Positions 58,680 through 64,000 of a DNA stretch of 64,000 nucleotides are shown one piece after another. Each line of letters begins with the position of its first letter. Position 1 is the first letter of the stretch. The notes below the pieces were generated by a model. It was not told the DNA's origin and did not search any database. It saw only the letters and a program-made list of their open reading frames with translations. Location of the stretch: positions 1-64,000 of the IMG/VR virus record IMGVR_UViG_3300021962_000021. One strand, written 5' to 3'. Made by a program: the position numbers and the translations under genes.

Positions 58680-58747
58680 TTTGGCGATTTCAAAAATTCT
58701 TCGTATATTTGATATTCAAATCGGTAATACTGATTTTAGTTCTTTAA
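58680..58747 (+). promoter_or_regulatory. sigma70-type promoter plus boxA-like element upstream of tmRNA
   Basis: TTTG 58680, TATATTTG 58704-58711, AGTTCTTTAA 58738-58747. Confidence 0.75.
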
Positions 58748-58752
58748 AATAT

Positions 58753-59122
58753 GGGGATGTTTGGTATTGATTGCCATGCGAATGATAATATCACAAGTAG
58801 AGAAATGATACTATCTCTTAATATCGTATCGAAACAATAAATGACGAAAAGTCAACAATGACTTACGATGACCTTATGGCATTCGTAGGTATGGATTACG
58901 CTGTAGCAGCCTAATCCTACTCGGGTCGGAATACATATAACCTAGGAACAGAAGTATCTATAAAGGTGGAAAATTGACTGAACCCAAAATCGAGTCAAAA
59001 CATTGATTATGATAAAATGTAAAAACTCATATATTTGTCAGTTGTGAATAACTGAATAAACTTGTGAGACGTTGGTATTATGATTACTCGGTAAGACACG
59101 GGTTCGACTCCCGTCATCTCCA
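58753..59122 (+). ncRNA. ssrA: tmRNA
   Basis: GGGGATG/CATCTCC acceptor stem with G3-U, T-arm GGTTCGACTCC, tag ORF 58843-58914 ending YAVAA-stop. Confidence 0.95.
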
Positions 59123-59212
59123 CAAAAACGCTAATATGTAAAGTATTGATTGTCAATAAGGCGTTGATTATCAATGAGTTATAACTTATTGATTTTCAAT
59201 GACTTAAGAAAG

Positions 59213-59221
59213 TTATCCACA
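59213..59221 (+). promoter_or_regulatory. perfect DnaA box
   Basis: TTATCCACA; single copy, function unproven. Confidence 0.4.
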
Positions 59222-59235
59222 TTTTTTAAAAAATA

Positions 59236-59306
59236 TTTGGTAGTTTAAAAAACTTTTCGTATATTTGATATTCAAATGTGAAAAACATATTTAGTTTAGT
59301 TCTTTA
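59236..59306 (+). promoter_or_regulatory. sigma70-type promoter plus boxA-like element upstream of tRNA-fMet
   Basis: TTTG 59236, TATATTTG 59260-59267, AGTTCTTTA 59298-59306. Confidence 0.75.
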
Positions 59307-59321
59307 TTTATATTATTATAT

Positions 59322-59394
59322 CGTGGGGTAGTAGCAGCGGTAGCTCGTTAGGCTCATAACCTAAAGGTCGGTGGTTCGAATCCATCCCCCGCAA
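59322..59394 (+). tRNA. tRNA-fMet (CAT), initiator type
   Basis: C1:A72 mismatch, anticodon loop CTCATAA, canonical T arm. Confidence 0.92.
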
Positions 59395-59593
59395 CAAAGT
59401 AATTAAGGTTGAAGCCAATAGTAATAAAACCGACTATGTGAAAAAAATAAAGCCGGATACCTTAATAACTTATTTTAAAAAATATTTGGTAGTTTAAAAA
59501 ACTTTCCTTATATTTACAATGTTCAAATGATATATGACCTTATAGGCGATGAAAGATACTCGGGTAGTTGATTTTGAATAAAAAATAAATAAA

Positions 59594-59692
59594 TTTGGTA
59601 GATTAATTTTTTTTTACTATATTTATTAAACATTGGGGTTGTAAATATTCTTACTAATGTAAGTTGTAAAGATTCCCCGATTAGTTCTTTAA
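59594..59692 (+). promoter_or_regulatory. promoter, hairpin and boxA-like leader
   Basis: TTTG 59594, TATATTTA 59618, GGGG..CCCC hairpin, AGTTCTTTAA 59683-59692. Confidence 0.65.
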
Positions 59693-60562
59693 AAGATTGA
59701 AAATATTTTACATAGTAGGCTCGTCCTACATAGTAAACAACCGCCGCCTATGGTGGTTAAATAAACTACGAAAGTAGGATAAAGTGAGAATGCTTGGTTT
59801 AGTATTCTTGCGGCATCAGCAATGGTGCTTGAGTAGGCAAGTGGGATATCATCTGAGCCTTGTACGAAAGGGTAACACTATATCGGAAGGGTTTGGGTGA
59901 CTGGGGATATGTAGAATCTCTAGTTGAGTTCGGAAGAACAATAAGAATAACCCATAGAATATCAGTAAGAAGTATGTGGCTAATCACTATATATCATTGC
60001 GGTATTCAATTTCAAAGTGGTCTTAAAACCAAGCTATCCGAAAGGACGTAAGGTATGTTAATGTACAAGTGGTGTTGTTATTAACCTTTAATGTGGGACA
60101 CCAATCCCTATTAATGAAGATGACTTAAAAAATGGTGTTGACGATAACACATTGGGTAGTTTAGTATTCTCTCGTTCAAAAGATGGGGGAGCTGGTTGGC
60201 AAGCCACTACCTGAACAATCTACAAACCAAACTCAAATTTGCTTTAGGTGCAAACTATAAATCAATTTTAAGCTTAAGTGCTTGCCAGTTACGGACGAAA
60301 GGTGTCTACATAGTAATGGGTTGTCCATTGCCACGATACCACCGCAAGTGGTCTGTGATTCTTACGAAAAGTTTCTAGTTCCGCAAGAATGAATTTGCTC
60401 GGCAGGGTAGAAGAAATAGAGTAATGAGAGAGTAGTCAGTAACTCAATGAGTGGTTAGCATTACTAACCGACACTGAACGGATACATCTCAAAAGGGTGT
60501 GGATAAGAAAGGAAAAAAATAATCTTTCTAAAGGACGTTCTTCCCAAATGTGTAATCTCAGC
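59693..60562 (+). ncRNA. large structured ncRNA, GOLLD-like
   Basis: ~870 nt without credible ORF, many GNRA-capped hairpins, own promoter, ends directly before a tRNA; boundaries approximate. Confidence 0.65.
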
Positions 60563-60571
60563 ATTTTATAA

Positions 60572-60665
60572 GCGGAGTTAGTGTAATGGTCCACGCGGGT
60601 TCGCCCACGGGTTAGCACACCCCTCTTCCAGGGGGGAAGATGTAGTTCGATTCTATGGCCCCGCT
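60572..60665 (+). tRNA. tRNA-Gly (TCC) with ~20 nt D-loop insertion
   Basis: CCCCT-CTTCCAG-GGGGG anticodon arm, U73, extra UUCG hairpin in D loop. Confidence 0.8.
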
Positions 60666-60996
60666 CAATTACGATTTTCGTAGTCTTTTTCCAATGTTGT
60701 TCTGGCAGGTGAGTGGACAAGTAGGTTAGGACTTTAAATATCAAACCTAAAAGTTGTAAGACTGTCAGTTTTTGTGGGGGAAGTTTTTTACTATAAACAA
60801 ACGTAATCTAACACGATATGATTACCGAATAAAAGTAGTAGGCCGCTACATTGAGAGTATTCGTTCCCCTTATTACTCTCTTTATTAAAGGCTAAATGGT
60901 AATTTGATGAGGCTAGTATTAACCGGAGCATGACTTGACGTGGCGTATTTTGAAATCGAATTACTTTTATTTAAAAAAATATTATATATATTAGAG

Positions 60997-61155
60997 ATGA
61001 AAACTTTAACATTACATACAAATTGTTCTAACCAATCATTGAGAAATGAGTGGCAGGGGATTAGTATGTTTAATGCTATATCAAATCCGGCAACGCTTAA
61101 TTTAGGCAAGGTGGATTATATTAGCAAGATGTTAGAGGACACTGATGTAGGATAA
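60997..61155 (+). CDS. short ORF, candidate leader peptide
   Basis: 52 aa MKTLTLHTNCSNQ...; stop 27 nt before a terminator that precedes the tRNA array. Confidence 0.45.
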   Translation: MKTLTLHTNCSNQSLRNEWQGISMFNAISNPATLNLGKVDYISKMLEDTDVG

Positions 61156-61182
61156 AATGTAAAAATTTTAGAACAATATTTG

Positions 61183-61214
61183 AAACCTCTAACTCACAAA
61201 GTTAGGGGTTTTTT
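61183..61214 (+). terminator. intrinsic terminator / attenuator
   Basis: AAACCTCTAAC / GTTAGGGGTTT stem plus T run. Confidence 0.8.
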
Positions 61215-61219
61215 GTTTT

Positions 61220-61294
61220 GGGGATATAGCTCAGCGGTAGAGCGGGTCACTGTTAATGACTAGGTCATAGGTTCGAATCCTTTTATCCCCGCCA
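61220..61294 (+). tRNA. tRNA-Asn (GTT)
   Basis: cloverleaf, CCA encoded. Confidence 0.95.
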
Positions 61295-61298
61295 AATA

Positions 61299-61373
61299 GG
61301 GAAATTAGCTCAGTTGGTTTAGAGCATCTCGTTTACACCGAGAGGGTCATTGGTTCGAATCCAGTATTTCCCA
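61299..61373 (+). tRNA. tRNA-Val (TAC)
   Basis: cloverleaf, TCTCG-TTTACAC-CGAGA. Confidence 0.95.
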
Positions 61374-61378
61374 CAAAC

Positions 61379-61460
61379 TGGGGTATCGCATAGTGGCAAT
61401 TGCGGCTGACTGTAAATCAGCTCTCATTTGAGTTCGGCGGTTCGAGTCCGTCTACCCCAA
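61379..61460 (+). tRNA. tRNA-Tyr (GTA)
   Basis: cloverleaf with long variable arm. Confidence 0.95.
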
Positions 61461-61469
61461 CAAACAATA

Positions 61470-61542
61470 GGTGATGTAGCTCAGTTGGTAGAGCACCGCA
61501 CTGAAGATGCGGGTGTCAGCAGTTCAAGTCTGTTTATCACCA
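61470..61542 (+). tRNA. tRNA-Phe (GAA)
   Basis: cloverleaf, CCGCA-CTGAAGA-TGCGG. Confidence 0.95.
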
Positions 61543-61548
61543 CAAAAT

Positions 61549-61622
61549 GACTTCTTAGCTCAATTGGTTAGAGCACTACACTTTTAATGTAGGGGTTTTG
61601 AGTTCGAGTCTCAAAGGGGTCA
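61549..61622 (+). tRNA. tRNA-Lys (TTT)
   Basis: cloverleaf, CTACA-CTTTTAA-TGTAG. Confidence 0.95.
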
Positions 61623-61632
61623 CTTTGAATAA

Positions 61633-61708
61633 CGGAATATAGAGGAGTCCGGTCTATCTCGCTTCGTTTGGGACGAAGAGCACGCAGGTTCGAATCCTGC
61701 TATTCCGA
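61633..61708 (+). tRNA. tRNA-Pro (TGG)
   Basis: cloverleaf, CTTCG-TTTGGGA-CGAAG. Confidence 0.95.
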
Positions 61709-61756
61709 CAGATATGGTTCGCACTAGACAATGCGTGAAAATAGGAAGTGCAAAAT

Positions 61757-61830
61757 TGGAATATAGCTCAATTGGTTAGAGCATTCGCCTGATACGCGAA
61801 AGGTTGTAGGTTCGAGTCCCACTATTCCAA
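61757..61830 (+). tRNA. tRNA-Ile (GAT)
   Basis: cloverleaf, TTCGC-CTGATAC-GCGAA. Confidence 0.95.
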
Positions 61831-61835
61831 CATAC

Positions 61836-61906
61836 ATCCGCATGGTGAAATGGTATCATAACGGTCTCCAAAACCGCTGTTCCGAGTTCGAATCTTGGTG
61901 TGGGTG
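61836..61906 (+). tRNA. tRNA-Trp (CCA)
   Basis: cloverleaf, G73. Confidence 0.9.
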
Positions 61907-61911
61907 CAATT

Positions 61912-61984
61912 GGCTCTTTGGTGTAATGGATTAGCACATAACACTACGGATGTTAGAGTAAGGGTTCGAATCCTTTAGGAGCTA
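61912..61984 (+). tRNA. tRNA-Arg (ACG)
   Basis: cloverleaf, TAACA-CTACGGA-TGTTA. Confidence 0.93.
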
Positions 61985-61999
61985 CTAAAACAAAATGAT

Positions 62000-62335
62000 A
62001 TGAAAACATTTAAAGATTTGGAATTTAATGCACATCCAACTCATATGTTGGGTGGAGTTCAAGCTCGTATGGATTTTGATAATGGGTATGGAGTGAGTGT
62101 AGTGAAAAGTCCATATACATATGGTGGTGATAAAGGATTATACGAATTAGCAGTATTCAAAGATGGTCATATTCATTATGATAATCCAATTGCTAAAGGT
62201 GATGTTGTTGGTTATTTAAGACCAGAAGATGTAACCGATGCAATGTTAATAATTCAGAAATTTGAAAAAGAAAATGAAATAAAAAATGATCCTGATTTTA
62301 TGTATAATTGGATTAGGAATAAAAGTGGAAAATAA
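62000..62335 (+). CDS. conserved phage hypothetical protein
   Basis: FDNGYGVSVV..YGG..GLYELAV. Confidence 0.7.
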   Translation: MKTFKDLEFNAHPTHMLGGVQARMDFDNGYGVSVVKSPYTYGGDKGLYELAVFKDGHIHYDNPIAKGDVVGYLRPEDVTDAMLIIQKFEKENEIKNDPDFMYNWIRNKSGK

Positions 62336-62338
62336 GAT

Positions 62339-62602
62339 ATGGCACATTTAATACCAAATAATTCCACTCCATCGGTAACACAAATTAAACCCAAACCAAT
62401 ATTCGTAATGAGGTTTAGTAATTCAATGAGTGATGAAGATGCGAGACAAACTTGTGAAACGATATACAAATCCGATATGAATAATGAGTATCATATAATT
62501 GTAATTCGTAATGACAAAGATAGAGATGAGTTTGAATTATATAACGCAGATAAGATTGAAAGACAAGAGTGGAATGAAATAGTTAAAAAATTAAAGTTAT
62601 GA
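62339..62602 (+). CDS. hypothetical protein
   Basis: 87 aa ORF. Confidence 0.6.
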   Translation: MAHLIPNNSTPSVTQIKPKPIFVMRFSNSMSDEDARQTCETIYKSDMNNEYHIIVIRNDKDRDEFELYNADKIERQEWNEIVKKLKL

Positions 62603-63123
62603 GACGTAAGATAATATTCATAGATGTAGATGGCCCGTTGGCGTGGGGAACGTGGGGTGATGGTAGAGTTGAAATGAGTTTAGGTTCATCATCAACATTT
62701 AAAATACCATACGCTTGGGTTGAAGAAGATTGTCAGGCTCTTAAAAAGATTTTGGATGAGAGTAATGCAAAGATGGTATTAAGTTCAGATTGGAGAAAAC
62801 ATTTTAGTTTCTTACAAATGAAAAGAATATTTGAATACTACGGAATTGCAGGACACAATTTGATTGATATAACTACACATCAGGACCTATGGATGAAGTT
62901 GAGTAGACCTGCAATTGAGTGGGAGAGAGCAGCTGAAATCAAAAAGTGGGTAAAGGATAATAAAATTAGTAATTGGATTTCAATTGATGATATGCAGTTG
63001 AATAAACAATTCAAATGGATGAAAGTTCCACAATGGAGACATGTTCAGGTTGATGGTGATTTTGGAGTAGGTGGTAGATTAAGAGATAAGATTGATGAAT
63101 GTATCATCAAACTAAATAGATAA
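62599..63123 (+). CDS. HAD-domain protein (Swiss Army Knife RNA-repair-like HAD)
   Basis: FIDVDGPL, VLSSDWR, RAAEI..W, WISIDD. Confidence 0.75.
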   Translation: MRRKIIFIDVDGPLAWGTWGDGRVEMSLGSSSTFKIPYAWVEEDCQALKKILDESNAKMVLSSDWRKHFSFLQMKRIFEYYGIAGHNLIDITTHQDLWMKLSRPAIEWERAAEIKKWVKDNKISNWISIDDMQLNKQFKWMKVPQWRHVQVDGDFGVGGRLRDKIDECIIKLNR

Positions 63124-63132
63124 AATAGTTGA

Positions 63133-63205
63133 GGCGGATTGGCCGAGGGAAGTGAGGTGAAGCTCTGCAAAAGCTTTTAGGTAGGTTTGAATCCTACATC
63201 CGCCT
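63133..63205 (+). tRNA. tRNA-Cys (GCA)
   Basis: cloverleaf, U73, AAGCT-CTGCAAA-AGCTT. Confidence 0.9.
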
Positions 63206-63214
63206 CAACTATAT

Positions 63215-63283
63215 TGTGGGAAGGTTAGGTAACCCGTTTGGTCTCATAAGCCAGATATTCAGGTTCGATTCCTGGTCCCGCAA
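63215..63283 (+). tRNA. tRNA-Met/Ile2 (CAT) with shortened D arm
   Basis: intact acceptor, anticodon and T arms; 69 nt. Confidence 0.75.
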
Positions 63284-63289
63284 CAACAT

Positions 63290-63364
63290 GGTGGCCGTAG
63301 CCTAATGGTAGGGCGAAAGTTTGTGGCACTTTATGTAAGAGTTCGATTCTCTTCGGTCACACCA
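63290..63364 (+). tRNA. tRNA-His (GTG)
   Basis: G-1, cloverleaf, A73, CCA encoded. Confidence 0.93.
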
Positions 63365-63423
63365 CCCCGGGTTTTGGAGCTGGTATCTCTTTTTCCCGAT
63401 ATAAATGAAAAAACTACCAAAAA

Positions 63424-63507
63424 GGAAAGATGGGTGAGTGGTTTAAACCAGCAGTTTACTAAACTGCCGATTCAAAAGGTCCGTGAGTTCGAATCTCACT
63501 CTTTCCG
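63424..63507 (+). tRNA. tRNA-Ser (ACT)
   Basis: long variable arm, G73, GCAGT-TTACTAA-ACTGC. Confidence 0.88.
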
Positions 63508-63508
63508 C

Positions 63509-63649
63509 ATGAAAAATGATAAATTTGAAACTAACAAAAGAGTAAATCGTATTGTTAGAATAAGAAAAATTATTAGAGAAAATGGAGCTTGTTTAATATG
63601 TGTGAGAAGATGGAATGGTGGAGTGAAAAAATATAGAACAAACTGTTAA
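63509..63649 (+). CDS. small basic hypothetical protein
   Basis: 46 aa ORF MKNDKFETNKR... filling the Ser-Leu spacer. Confidence 0.35.
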   Translation: MKNDKFETNKRVNRIVRIRKIIRENGACLICVRRWNGGVKKYRTNC

Positions 63650-63652
63650 AAT

Positions 63653-63726
63653 GCCCGTATGGCGTAATTGGCAACCGCACTGGTCTTAGAAACCAGTTTG
63701 TGAAAGTTCGAGTCTTTCTACGGGTA
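63653..63726 (+). tRNA. tRNA-Leu (TAG) with short variable loop
   Basis: CTGGT-CTTAGAA-ACCAG, A73, 5 nt variable loop. Confidence 0.88.
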
Positions 63727-63755
63727 CAAAAAATAAATTATCAATATGTAATATT

Positions 63756-64000
63756 ATGGAATACAAACGGCTATATGATGGAGTAAAAATTGACATGATT
63801 GAATATGTCAGAGAGTATTTAAGTGGAAAAGAAAATGTAGAAATACTAATTGGTTGTGATTCACAAAACTTTTCCGATAAAACTATTTACGCAATCGTTG
63901 TAGCTTTGTATCATAAAGGTAAAGGAGCACATGTTCTTTATAGTAAATGGAAAACCCAAAGAGAACCAACACGTTCAGTAAGATTGTTGAGTGAAGTATG
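63756..64000 (+). CDS. YkuK-like (RNase H-fold) protein, truncated by window end
   Basis: hand-read MEYKRLYDG..EILIGCDSQ..YAIVVALY..GKGAHVLY..RLLSEV. Confidence 0.75.
   Translation, partial: MEYKRLYDGVKIDMIEYVREYLSGKENVEILIGCDSQNFSDKTIYAIVVALYHKGKGAHVLYSKWKTQREPTRSVRLLSEV

What the first reader, a model, noticed from the sequence alone, without database searches (positions are those of the whole stretch)
59693..60562. ~870 nt ornate non-coding RNA at the head of the tRNA array (GOLLD-like or new)
Seen: no credible ORF, its own promoter and boxA-like leader, and dense hairpins. Examples are GTAGG/CCTAC 59715-59729, AACCGCC/GGTGGTT 59739-59758, CTAC-GAAA-GTAG 59766-59777, GTTC-GGAA-GAAC 59928-59939, TCC-GAAA-GGA, ACCAC/GTGGT and GGTTAG/CTAACC. 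It ends 9 nt before tRNA-Gly. Known: GOLLD RNAs are ~800 nt structured RNAs of unknown function, often next to tRNA genes in phages. Inference: a GOLLD family member or a new large RNA class. My recognition rests on size, context and remembered similarity only.
Basis: partly seen in the sequence, partly recalled or inferred. Interest (0 to 1): 0.75.

Follow-up and report, generated by a model that had tools for sequence, protein, structure and literature searches.

The report
GOLLD RNA in a jumbo phage
The ~870-nt non-coding stretch is a genuine, expressed copy of the known giant phage RNA GOLLD (the kind that self-assembles into an RNA-only nanocage). It is ordinary as a family member, but it comes with a conserved rRNA-style boxA leader and unusual RNA neighbours that are worth a note.

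Summary
Window 60152-60564 (+) matches Rfam GOLLD (RF02032) end to end at 278.6 bits (cut-off 150, E about 1e-78). The upstream half (about 59741-60151) is the lake/marine-type GOLLD 5' domain. It is homologous in more than 110 IMG/VR phage contigs and to the cryo-EM construct env-38. Across 92 distinct full-length homologs, 210 predicted pairs are 95.5% canonical and 160 carry compensatory changes; slid controls give about 40% and 47-73. Four lake or river metatranscriptomes cover 59744-60526 at word depths of hundreds to about 10,000, with near-zero flanks. The genome is a 238-kb T4-like jumbo phage, and GOLLD sits between tmRNA/tRNA-Met and a tRNA array. New details: a conserved sigma70-like promoter (59595-59623) and a boxA-like GTTCTTTAA (59684-59692), found upstream of the core in 98 of 98 homologs. 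The tRNA-Gly(UCC) 7 nt downstream carries a 23-nt hairpin insertion in its D-loop. Two non-Rfam RNA elements follow at 60705-60931 and 60906-60969. Mechanism (inferred): Nus/boxA-assisted transcription, release at the flanking tRNA, and assembly into a homo-14-mer cage. The cellular role remains unknown. Verdict: new member of a known kind.

The parts
59595..59623 (+). Sigma70-like promoter of the GOLLD unit: -35 TTGGTA at 59595-59600 and -10 TATATT at 59618-59623. The inferred transcription start is about 59630.
   Evidence: Found by the promoter scan. The same hexamer pair occurs 13 times in the window against 1.9 expected. It is conserved as TTGGTA/TAGGAA-N17-TATATT/TATCTT upstream of boxA in 7 of 8 close relatives.
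59684..59692 (+). boxA-like element GTTCTTTAA in the transcribed leader.
   Evidence: GTTCTT[TA][AGT] lies within 160 nt upstream of the GOLLD core in 98 of 98 homologous loci, against a background of 0.057 per 160 nt. An RNA contig of a related variant in run X16 spans 59663-59785, so the leader is transcribed. The same 9-mer sits 6 nt before the tmRNA at 58739-58747.
59715..59729 (+). Leader hairpin GUAGG-CUCGU-CCUAC, flanked by two copies of ACAUAGUA.
   Evidence: Conserved, with compensatory changes in relatives (alignments A2 and A5).
59741..60151 (+). GOLLD 5' domain of the lake/marine env-38 type, with about 19 helices.
   Evidence: nhmmer finds homology in more than 110 IMG/VR loci. 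Every 5' helix of 3 or more pairs has compensatory changes. The start of the env-38 construct aligns here by eye. Metatranscriptome depth rises from the 59744 bin onward.
60152..60564 (+). GOLLD 3' domain. It includes the variable linker (about 60209-60276), the L21a hairpin (60378-60390, loop CGCAA) and the L21b hairpin (60394-60411, loop GGCA).
   Evidence: Rfam RF02032 at 278.6 bits, model positions 1-416 of 416. Covariation.
60572..60665 (+). tRNA-Gly(UCC), anticodon at 60627-60629, with a 23-nt G+C-rich UUCG-capped hairpin inserted in the D-loop after G18G19 (60590-60612).
   Evidence: Alignment A1 with the canonical tRNA-Gly(TCC) that follows GOLLD in L007, L057, L082 and L008. Fold. ARAGORN and Rfam miss it. 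The insert is unique in the genome. It is present in RNA contig 60328-60656 of run X15.
60705..60931 (+). Unclassified abundant RNA ('U element') between the tRNA-Gly and the E motif.
   Evidence: A 228-nt contig at word depth 267-447 in three metatranscriptomes. Some helices covary across 5-7 relatives, including a long-range GGGGAA/UUCCCC pairing. No Rfam hit at E up to 1.
60906..60969 (+). 'E motif': a 9-12 bp covarying outer stem around a core containing UAACCRGAGCAUGACUUG. In this sequence class a U-tract follows.
   Evidence: 48 IMG/VR loci hold the exact 18-mer. Of these, 34 lie 60-700 nt after a GOLLD 3' domain on the same strand. The other 14 belong to other sequence classes and mostly sit right after a tRNA or a boxA. 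The outer stem covaries in 39 distinct sequences. No Rfam family matches.
60997..61155 (+). Small conserved ORF of 52 aa, function unknown.
   Evidence: Conserved in L114, L130, L138, L211 and L212, with in-frame indels and synonymous-type changes. No Pfam hit.
61182..61212 (+). Terminator-like hairpin just before tRNA-Asn and the tRNA array.
   Evidence: Terminator scan; conserved in relatives.
58739..59123 (+). Upstream neighbours: boxA-like 9-mer (58739-58747) and tmRNA (58753-59123). tRNA-Met follows at 59322-59395.

Best explanation
Shown:
- Window ~59741-60564 (+) encodes a complete GOLLD RNA of the environmental, env-38-like type. It has a ~411-nt 5' domain and a 413-nt 3' domain.
- It lies in a 238-kb T4-like jumbo phage, inside an island of non-coding RNA genes: tmRNA, tRNA-Met, GOLLD, tRNA-Gly, then a tRNA array.
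- RNA matching it is abundant in lake and river metatranscriptomes.

Inferred:
- The gene is transcribed from its own sigma70-like promoter (59595-59623).
- The ~110-nt leader carries a boxA element (59684-59692). This recruits host NusB/NusE (S10) and the other Nus factors to RNA polymerase, as at rRNA operons. It would protect the long untranslated transcript from Rho and/or help it fold as it is made.
- The transcript runs on into the tRNA-Gly. RNase P cleavage at the tRNA 5' end (60572) sets the GOLLD 3' end, and the leader is trimmed back to about 59741.
- By homology with env-38, the mature RNA assembles without protein into a D7-symmetric homo-14-mer nanocage. The 5' domains form the caps, the 3' domains form the rings, the L21a/L21b kissing loops join the two halves, and the variable linker (about 60209-60276) points inward.

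What the cage does for the phage is unknown. Published hypotheses are encapsulation or scaffolding of tRNAs, ribosomes or other cargo.
For: Family membership:
- Rfam RF02032 at 278.6 bits against a cut-off of 150, covering the full model.
- The 5' domain is homologous in more than 110 phage contigs. The env-38 sequence in the supplement of PMC12286853 is visibly collinear from window ~59741.

Structure:
- In the 15-sequence tool alignment, 111 of 199 predicted pairs have compensatory changes.
- In 92 distinct sequences, 210 pairs are 95.5% canonical and 160 have compensatory changes in at least 2 sequences. Slid controls give 39-43% canonical and 47-73 such pairs.
- The L21a loop CGCAA carries the self-complementary GC, which becomes CG in L002. 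The L21b hairpin is present. This matches the description of env-38 rather than the decameric S. agalactiae form, which lacks P21b (PMC12286853, PMC12990946).

Expression:
- Word depth is hundreds to about 10,000 over 59744-60526, against 0-25 over 59135-59656, in four metatranscriptomes.
- Several contigs match the window with 0-1 differences.
- One contig (60328-60656) bridges GOLLD into the tRNA-Gly.

Promoter.

boxA: present in 98 of 98 homologs, transcribed, and also found 6 nt before the mature tmRNA 5' end.

tRNA at the 3' boundary: ARAGORN finds a tRNA within 20 nt of the GOLLD end in 20 of 95 loci. In Acinetobacter phage YMC13/03/R2096, GOLLD is sandwiched between tRNA-Asn and tRNA-Asp.
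Against: - No experiment bears on this copy. Oligomer state, Nus binding and RNase P cleavage are all inferences.
- The metatranscriptome data are assembled contigs pooled from related strains. Depth is an assembler word depth, and no exact 5' or 3' ends could be read.
- boxA is not universal to GOLLD. The Acinetobacter phage copy has none between the upstream tRNA and GOLLD.
- Only about a fifth of homologs have a recognisable tRNA directly downstream, so tRNA-guided 3' end formation cannot be general.
- The window's boxA has U where E. coli has C at position 3. That this is tolerated rests on my own knowledge of Gram-positive and mycobacterial boxA sequences. The host is unknown.
Confidence: 0.88

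Rival explanations
1. The conserved GTTCTTTAA is not an RNA-level boxA. It is instead a DNA-level promoter element, for example a T4 MotA-box-like middle-promoter box, or some other phage-specific protein-binding site.
For: The phage is T4-like by its family B DNA polymerase. By my own knowledge, the T4 MotA box (a/t)(a/t)(a/t)TGCTT(t/c)A resembles TTCTTTA. A-T-rich hexamers resembling a -10 element follow the motif.
Against: - The downstream -10-like hexamer is not conserved in relatives, and the conserved CATAGT lies 17 nt away, not 12 +/- 1.
- A conserved sigma70-type promoter lies upstream of the motif, and an RNA contig covers the motif.
- The same motif sits 6 nt before the mature tmRNA 5' end, where it can only be part of the transcript.
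- The match to boxA (GYUCUUUAA) is 9 of 9. The match to the MotA box lacks the G.
Confidence: 0.1
2. The stretch is a new large RNA class, or an intron, ROOL or OLE, rather than GOLLD.
For: Before testing, only size and context pointed anywhere. The Rfam model covers just the 3' half.
Against: The GOLLD match covers the full model at E about 1e-78. No other Rfam family matches 59100-61300 at E up to 1, apart from tRNA, tmRNA and a spurious SmY hit. The 5' half is collinear with the 5' domain of env-38 GOLLD.
Confidence: 0.01
3. GOLLD here is a decaying remnant, and the flanking tRNA-Gly with its D-loop insertion is a pseudogene. The region would then be a relic of a tRNA island rather than a working unit.
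For: The tRNA-Gly is not recognised by ARAGORN or Rfam. In other relatives (L130, L138, L196, L147) the homologous element has a degenerate T-arm.
Against: - GOLLD scores as high as its relatives: 278.6 bits against 287-297.
- Few pairs are non-canonical.
- It is abundant as RNA with 0-1 differences in independent samples.
- The tRNA-Gly keeps its acceptor, anticodon and T arms.
Confidence: 0.03
4. The GOLLD 3' end is made by termination or processing at the downstream E motif (stem plus U-tract, 60906-60979), not by RNase P at the tRNA. The primary product would be a longer GOLLD-tRNA-U-E transcript.
For: The E motif follows GOLLD-tRNA in 34 loci, and in this sequence class it ends in a U-run. 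RNA contigs cover 60328-60656 and 60705-60931.
Against: - Depth drops about ten-fold after about 60526, reaches zero or near zero in two of four runs over 60614-60700, and then rises again at 60701-60961. This fits separate stable species.
- Other E-motif classes lack a U-tract.
- The two models are not exclusive: a long precursor could be processed at the tRNA.
Confidence: 0.2

Closest known systems
GOLLD RNA env-38 (marine metagenome JCVI_SCAF_1096627009515; cryo-EM homo-14-mer, PDB 9MEE; Kretsch et al. 2025, PMC12286853)
   Same: - Same two-domain plan and nearly the same size: 833 nt in env-38 against about 824 nt here.
- Collinear 5' domain from its first nucleotides.
- Same 3' domain, including the L21a and L21b hairpins and a variable linker.
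- Phage context downstream of a tRNA-Met.
   Different: - The sequence has diverged. The closest homolog fetched from IMG/VR, L008, is 87.5% identical; most are 57-77%.
- The assembly state of this copy is untested.
- The boxA leader, promoter and flanking tRNA-like element are described here from genomic context. They were not found linked to GOLLD in the searchable literature.
GOLLD of cultured phages and prophages (Acinetobacter phage YMC13/03/R2096 and relatives; Caulobacter phiCbK-like; Lactobacillales; Mycobacterium tRNA arrays)
   Same: Rfam GOLLD 3' domain at 217.6 bits in the Acinetobacter phage, embedded in a tRNA array with a tRNA directly 3'.
   Different: The Acinetobacter copy is shorter (about 735 nt between two tRNAs). 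It has a tRNA directly 5' and no boxA or own promoter. The S. agalactiae GOLLD lacks P9, P11a-c and P21b and forms decamers (PMC12990946).
rRNA operon leaders and lambda nut sites (boxA, NusB/NusE/NusA/NusG/SuhB antitermination and folding complex)
   Same: The boxA-like 9-mer matches the GYUCUUUAA consensus. It lies tens of nt downstream of a promoter, ahead of a long structured untranslated RNA that is co-transcribed with a tRNA. A hairpin follows it, as boxB follows boxA in nut sites.
   Different: No Nus binding was tested. There is no recognisable boxC and no leader-trailer helix. Position 3 is U rather than the C of E. coli. The host is unknown.
ROOL RNA (RF03087)
   Same: Phage-encoded, near tRNA islands, and forms an RNA-only nanocage (PMC12286853).
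   Different: Unrelated in sequence and fold. There is no Rfam match in the window.

Membership tests
GOLLD RNA (Rfam RF02032) | Covariance-model match above the curated gathering score over the conserved 3' domain | tested here: met
   278.6 bits against 150, model positions 1-416 of 416, E 1.8e-78.
GOLLD RNA (Rfam RF02032) | 3' domain helices supported by covariation | tested here: met
   15 helices in 60161-60542. Of these, 14 have compensatory pairs across 92 sequences.
GOLLD RNA (Rfam RF02032) | Large structured 5' domain, variable between subgroups; here the env-38/lake type | tested here: met
   nhmmer homology in more than 110 loci. 19 helices with compensatory changes. Collinear by eye with the env-38 sequence in the paper's supplement. 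That last comparison was not computed.
GOLLD RNA (Rfam RF02032) | Total length about 800 nt or more, and no coding capacity | tested here: met
   59741-60564 is 824 nt. Homologs run 770-874 nt from core to end. The longest overlapping ORF is 63 aa.
GOLLD RNA (Rfam RF02032) | Poorly conserved linker inside the 3' domain | tested here: met
   About 60209-60276 aligns poorly, with low posterior probability in the CM alignment and variable columns in A2. It is closed by a covarying helix, 60198-60208/60277-60286.
GOLLD RNA (Rfam RF02032) | Phage or prophage location next to tRNA genes | tested here: met
   A 238-kb virus record with PolB and RNR genes. tmRNA and tRNA-Met lie upstream; tRNA-Gly and a 14-tRNA array lie downstream.
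GOLLD RNA (Rfam RF02032) | Symmetric kissing loops L21a (self-complementary GC/CG dinucleotide) and L21b, characteristic of the 14-mer form | tested here: met
   Loop CGCAA at 60382-60386, which is UCGAA in L002. Conserved loop GGCA at 60401-60404. P-numbering was assigned from the text of PMC12286853, not from its figure.
GOLLD RNA (Rfam RF02032) | RNA-only homo-oligomeric nanocage | not testable with these tools
   Needs mass photometry or cryo-EM of the transcript.
GOLLD RNA (Rfam RF02032) | Expressed as a stable RNA | tested here: met
   Four metatranscriptomes show a sharp depth plateau over 59744-60526. Timing during infection is not testable.
boxA / Nus-factor antitermination site | Sequence matching the boxA consensus in a transcribed leader downstream of a promoter | tested here: met
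   GTTCTTTAA at 59684-59692, about 55 nt after the inferred transcription start. Present in 98 of 98 homologs. An RNA contig covers it.
boxA / Nus-factor antitermination site | Binding of NusB/NusE, and an effect on termination or folding | not testable with these tools
   Needs EMSA and reporter assays. The host is unknown.
tRNA-Gly (canonical elongator tRNA) | Cloverleaf with a D-loop of normal size, recognised by tRNA finders | tested here: not met
   Acceptor, anticodon (UCC) and T arms are present. A 23-nt insertion makes the D-loop about 30 nt. ARAGORN and the Rfam tRNA model find nothing. I therefore call it a tRNA-Gly-derived element, not a proven decoding tRNA.
ROOL, OLE, group I/II introns, RNase P, 6S and self-cleaving ribozymes (Rfam) | Covariance-model match | tested here: not met
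   No match at the gathering threshold in the window, or at E up to 1 in 59100-61300. This also holds for the U and E elements.

The most novel reading that the evidence does not exclude
The GOLLD locus is an rRNA-operon-like unit for making a giant RNA machine.
- A boxA/Nus-modified polymerase both shields the untranslated transcript and acts as a co-transcriptional folding chaperone for the cage subunit.
- tRNA-derived elements serve as punctuation for RNase P.
- The two downstream non-Rfam RNAs belong to the same module as partners or cargo. These are the abundant ~230-nt U element and the E motif, which recurs in at least 48 phage tRNA/tmRNA/GOLLD islands.
- The E motif would then be a new RNA class of phage non-coding-RNA islands.
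Probability: 0.25. Interest if true: 0.6.

Novelty: new member of a known kind. Interest (0 to 1): 0.35.

Why it matters
GOLLD is one of the largest bacterial or phage non-coding RNAs. Since 2025 it has been known to form an RNA-only nanocage, and its function is still unknown. This copy adds no new kind of element, but the comparative set gathered here gives testable handles on how it is made:
- a boxA leader found in all 98 homologs of the lake/marine clade that were examined, which suggests Nus-factor involvement as at rRNA operons;
- a conserved promoter;
- tRNA or tRNA-derived punctuation at the 3' end;
- direct metatranscriptomic evidence that these RNAs are abundant in lakes and rivers.

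The neighbouring E motif and U element are candidate new structured RNAs in phage tRNA/tmRNA/GOLLD islands. The D-loop-expanded tRNA-Gly is an oddity that could show what a tRNA next to GOLLD is really for.

Tried and rejected
- A test for an acceptor-stem-like 7-bp closure right after GOLLD in all homologs was uninformative: 43 of 95 loci against 33% at random positions. The tRNA-punctuation claim therefore rests only on ARAGORN calls (20 of 95) and on alignments A1 and A3.
- The 23-nt D-loop insert was searched for in the whole phage genome as a possible mobile mini-element. It is unique.
- The complement of the invariant E-motif loop was searched for in 58701-64000 (7-9-mers) and in the whole window (8-mers). 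None was found.
- By eye I considered hammerhead and HDV-like (theta-type) ribozyme folds for the E motif. I rejected both. The apparent GAUGAG is part of a covarying stem. There is also no room for a P1 strand between the tRNA end and the stem. No ribozyme family matches in Rfam.
- A 12-nt complementarity of one E-motif class to a conserved 16S rRNA segment, recalled from memory, shrinks to 8 nt in the other classes. I dropped it as probable chance.
- The nearest cultured phage by PolB, Microcystis phage Mel-JY01 (49% aa identity), has no GOLLD. It offers no experimental system.
- The count of structure pairs and a custom covariance model were not used on the full alignment. Doing so would have required typing a structure string of more than 1000 characters, and the model limit is 400 columns. 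Equivalent counts with slid controls were computed in Python.
- The env-38 sequence was compared by eye only, so as not to paste a long sequence.
Full report
What is there. The window is the first 64 kb of a 238,219-bp IMG/VR virus record that CheckV rates complete. It has about 31% G+C and nearly all long ORFs on the + strand. It encodes a family B DNA polymerase and a class II ribonucleotide reductase. The nearest cultured relative by PolB is Microcystis phage Mel-JY01 at 49% aa identity, followed by T4-like cyanophages at about 30%. Sequencing runs that hold the stretch are marine, estuary, freshwater and lake metagenomes. The finding lies in an island of RNA genes. The order is tmRNA (58753-59123), tRNA-Met (59322-59395), the ~870-nt stretch, and then 14 tRNAs between 61220 and 63727.

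Checking the observation. No ORF longer than 63 aa overlaps the stretch. The stretch is therefore non-coding and densely structured, as described.

Identity. Rfam's GOLLD model (RF02032) matches 60152-60564 on the + strand at 278.6 bits against a gathering score of 150. E is 1.8e-78 in the whole window, and the match covers model positions 1-416 of 416. The Rfam model holds only the conserved 3' domain. No other family matches 59100-61300 at E up to 1, apart from tRNA, tmRNA and a spurious SmY hit. This excludes ROOL, OLE, introns and known ribozymes as far as Rfam can see.

The 5' half. blastn found a 634-kb uncultured huge phage, LR745206.1, collinear over both halves, and Acinetobacter phages matching the 3' part only. 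Pattern scans of IMG/VR with conserved GOLLD words, followed by nhmmer, gave more than 110 contigs in which both halves are homologous to the window. Homology shared by all of them starts at about 59739. The closest relatives (L008, L007, L057, L080, L002 and others) are also alignable from about 59678, which is the leader. The sequence of the env-38 cryo-EM construct is printed in the supplement of Kretsch et al. 2025 (PMC12286853). It is visibly collinear with the window from about 59741, and its 3' domain begins with the same words as window 60152 (compared by eye only). The structured RNA is therefore about 59741-60564, or 824 nt. env-38 is 833 nt, split 420 + 413.

Covariation. In the 15-sequence tool alignment A2, RNAalifold predicts 199 pairs, and 111 of them have at least one compensatory double change. 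In a MAFFT alignment of 92 distinct full-length homologs (57-87.5% identical to the window), RNAalifold predicts 210 pairs. Of the cells, 95.5% are canonical, and 160 pairs have compensatory changes in at least two sequences. When the 3' partners are slid by 1-3 columns, 39-43% of cells are canonical and 47-73 pairs qualify. All 19 helices wholly within the 5' domain carry compensatory pairs, as do 14 of 15 in the 3' domain. Two short 5'-to-3' spanning helices with no covariation are probably spurious.

Which kind of GOLLD. Published cryo-EM work shows that env-38 forms a D7 homo-14-mer cage. The 5' domains form the caps and the 3' domains form the rings. A disordered variable linker faces inward, and the symmetric kissing loops L21a and L21b join the half-shells. 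The S. agalactiae GOLLD lacks P9, P11a-c and P21b and forms mainly decamers (PMC12286853, PMC12990946). The window has both L21 hairpins. One is 60378-60390 with loop CGCAA; its central GC becomes CG in L002, which is the switch the paper reports. The other is 60394-60411 with the conserved loop GGCA. It also has a poorly conserved linker at about 60209-60276, closed by a covarying helix, and a full-size 5' domain. I therefore predict an env-38-like 14-mer. This is an inference from homology.

Expression. Contigs from four lake or river metatranscriptomes were laid on 58700-61300. Word depth is 100 to more than 10,000 across 59744-60526. It is 0-25 across 59135-59656 and 2-416 in the leader bin 59657-59743. 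Many contigs come from related strains, but several match the window with 0-1 differences. Examples are 59823-59944, 59944-60050, 60091-60178, 60239-60357, 60229-60533 and 60328-60656. The sharp plateau with silent flanks argues against DNA carry-over. One contig from a variant covers 59663-59785, so the boxA leader is transcribed. Another (60328-60656, one difference) runs from GOLLD into the tRNA-Gly, which fits co-transcription. Exact ends cannot be read from assembled contigs.

Promoter and boxA. A TTGGTA-N17-TATATT promoter lies at 59595-59623. The same hexamer pair also precedes tRNA-Met (59237) and occurs at 59486. It is enriched in the window, 13 occurrences against 1.9 expected, and 12 of the 13 are on the + strand. 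Seven of eight close relatives keep it upstream of the leader. About 55 nt downstream of the inferred transcription start lies GTTCTTTAA (59684-59692). In all 98 homologous loci with enough upstream sequence, GTTCTT[TA][AGT] lies within 160 nt upstream of the core. The commonest distance is exactly the window's 55 nt, and the background rate is 0.057 per 160 nt. By my own knowledge, the motif fits the boxA consensus: E. coli rrn UGCUCUUUAACAA, and GUUCUUUGA in many other bacteria. The 8-nt NusB/NusE site is described in PMC3177189. The same 9-mer lies 6 nt before the mature 5' end of the phage tmRNA. That position recurs in 3 of 15 other distinct tmRNA loci, and degenerate GTTATTTGA variants occupy the same place in others. 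No paper in the searchable library links GOLLD to boxA or antitermination. Nus factors at rRNA operons are now thought to act mainly in co-transcriptional folding, as well as against Rho (PMC5725501). Either role would suit an 800-nt untranslated, intricately folded RNA. boxA is not universal to GOLLD. In Acinetobacter phage YMC13/03/R2096, GOLLD directly follows tRNA-Asn with no boxA.

The 3' boundary. GOLLD ends at 60564, and a tRNA-Gly(UCC) begins at 60572. It is orthologous to the canonical tRNA-Gly(TCC) found 6-10 nt after GOLLD in L007, L057, L082 and L008. The window copy, however, carries a 23-nt G+C-rich insertion (60590-60612) right after G18G19 of the D-loop, which folds as a UUCG-capped hairpin. 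This explains why ARAGORN and Rfam miss it. The insert is unique in the genome. It is present in an RNA contig from an independent sample, and no read joint skips it. It is therefore neither an assembly error nor an evidently spliced intron. In other relatives (L130, L138, L196, L147) the homologous element keeps its acceptor stem and UCC loop but has a degenerate T-arm. Overall, ARAGORN finds a tRNA within 20 nt after GOLLD in 20 of 95 loci: Met 15, Gly 4, Leu 1. I infer that in this clade the tRNA or tRNA-like element serves at least as an RNase P processing signal that frees the GOLLD 3' end. Whether the window's copy still decodes is open.

Downstream extras (outside the finding).
(a) 60705-60931 is covered by a 228-nt RNA contig at depth 267-447 in three metatranscriptomes. 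It has no Rfam match. It shows some covarying helices in 5-7 relatives, including a long-range pairing between GGGGAA at about 60776 and UUCCCC at about 60865.
(b) 60906-60969 is a stem of 9-12 covarying pairs around a highly conserved core, followed by a U-run. The exact 18-mer from its core occurs in 48 IMG/VR loci. Of these, 34 lie 60-700 nt after a GOLLD 3' domain on the same strand. The other 14 belong to three other sequence classes with different covarying outer stems. They mostly sit directly after a tRNA 3' end, or after a boxA in tmRNA/tRNA/GOLLD islands. The invariance of the 18-mer is partly an artefact of how the loci were found. The covariation of the stems is not.
(c) A conserved 52-aa ORF (60997-61155) and a terminator-like hairpin (61182-61212) precede the tRNA array.

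Verdict. Both the observation and the GOLLD interpretation are confirmed. This is a new, unannotated member of a known family, of the best-characterised (env-38-like) subtype, so it is not surprising to a specialist. What this check adds is the conserved promoter-boxA leader, the evidence for tRNA-derived punctuation, the metatranscriptomic abundance, and two candidate new RNA motifs next door. The cellular function of GOLLD remains unknown. The mechanism given here (Nus-assisted transcription, tRNA-guided release, self-assembly into a 14-mer cage) is shown at the level of sequence features and inferred at the level of biochemistry.

Noticed in passing
window 60572-60665 (insertion 60590-60612): The tRNA-Gly(UCC) directly after GOLLD carries a 23-nt G+C-rich UUCG-capped hairpin inserted in the D-loop after G18G19. 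Orthologs in L007, L057, L082 and L008 lack it. The insert is unique in the genome and present in an RNA contig, and tRNA finders miss the gene. In L130, L138, L196 and L147 the same element instead has a degenerate T-arm.
   Followed up: partly
window 60906-60969 (+ U-tract to ~60979); also L213:2343-2436, L222:159-252(-), L246:8873-8966 and 30+ other loci: 'E motif': a covarying outer stem around a core containing UAACCRGAGCAUGACUUG. It occurs in 48 IMG/VR phage loci. 34 lie just downstream of GOLLD-tRNA. The others, in three further sequence classes, lie directly after a tRNA or a boxA in tmRNA/tRNA/GOLLD islands. No Rfam family matches. It is a candidate new RNA motif of unknown function.
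   Followed up: partly
window 60705-60931: A ~230-nt non-coding stretch is covered by a 228-nt contig at high depth in three lake metatranscriptomes. It shows some covarying helices and a possible pseudoknot in 5-7 relatives. No Rfam hit. It is absent from relatives in which the E motif follows the tRNA directly (L130, L147).
   Followed up: partly
window 58739-58747 and 58753-59123: The phage-encoded tmRNA (tag peptide ending YAVAA) is preceded, 6 nt before its mature 5' end, by the same boxA-like GTTCTTTAA as GOLLD. Three of 15 other distinct phage tmRNA loci share the motif at the same distance. Others have GTTATTTGA there. A tmRNA lies within 1.5 kb upstream of GOLLD in 14 of 82 homologous loci.
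   Followed up: partly
window 59237-59265, 59486-59514, 59595-59623 and ten other sites: The promoter-like pair TTGGTA-N17-TATATT is strongly enriched: 13 sites against 1.9 expected, 12 of them on the + strand. Three copies lie in the 400 nt ahead of tRNA-Met and GOLLD. The copy at 59486 has no obvious gene behind it.
   Followed up: no
window 60997-61155: A conserved 52-aa ORF lies between the E motif and a terminator-like hairpin (61182-61212). The conserved residues include GISMF...NP..LNLGKVDYIS...LEDTDVG. No Pfam match. L196 and L147 carry a shorter version.
   Followed up: partly
L249 (KM672662.1 16319-17057) and relatives H2-H8: Cultured Acinetobacter phages (YMC13/03/R2096, P577, Ab15, Bestia, Herod, vB_AciJM_313) carry an unannotated GOLLD between tRNA-Asn and tRNA-Asp. 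In one record the region is annotated as a hypothetical protein.
   Followed up: partly
window 63424-63508: ARAGORN calls a tRNA-Ser with anticodon ACT, which is unusual. The tRNA array also holds a second tRNA-Met with a weak Rfam score (63215-63284, 29.9 bits).
   Followed up: no
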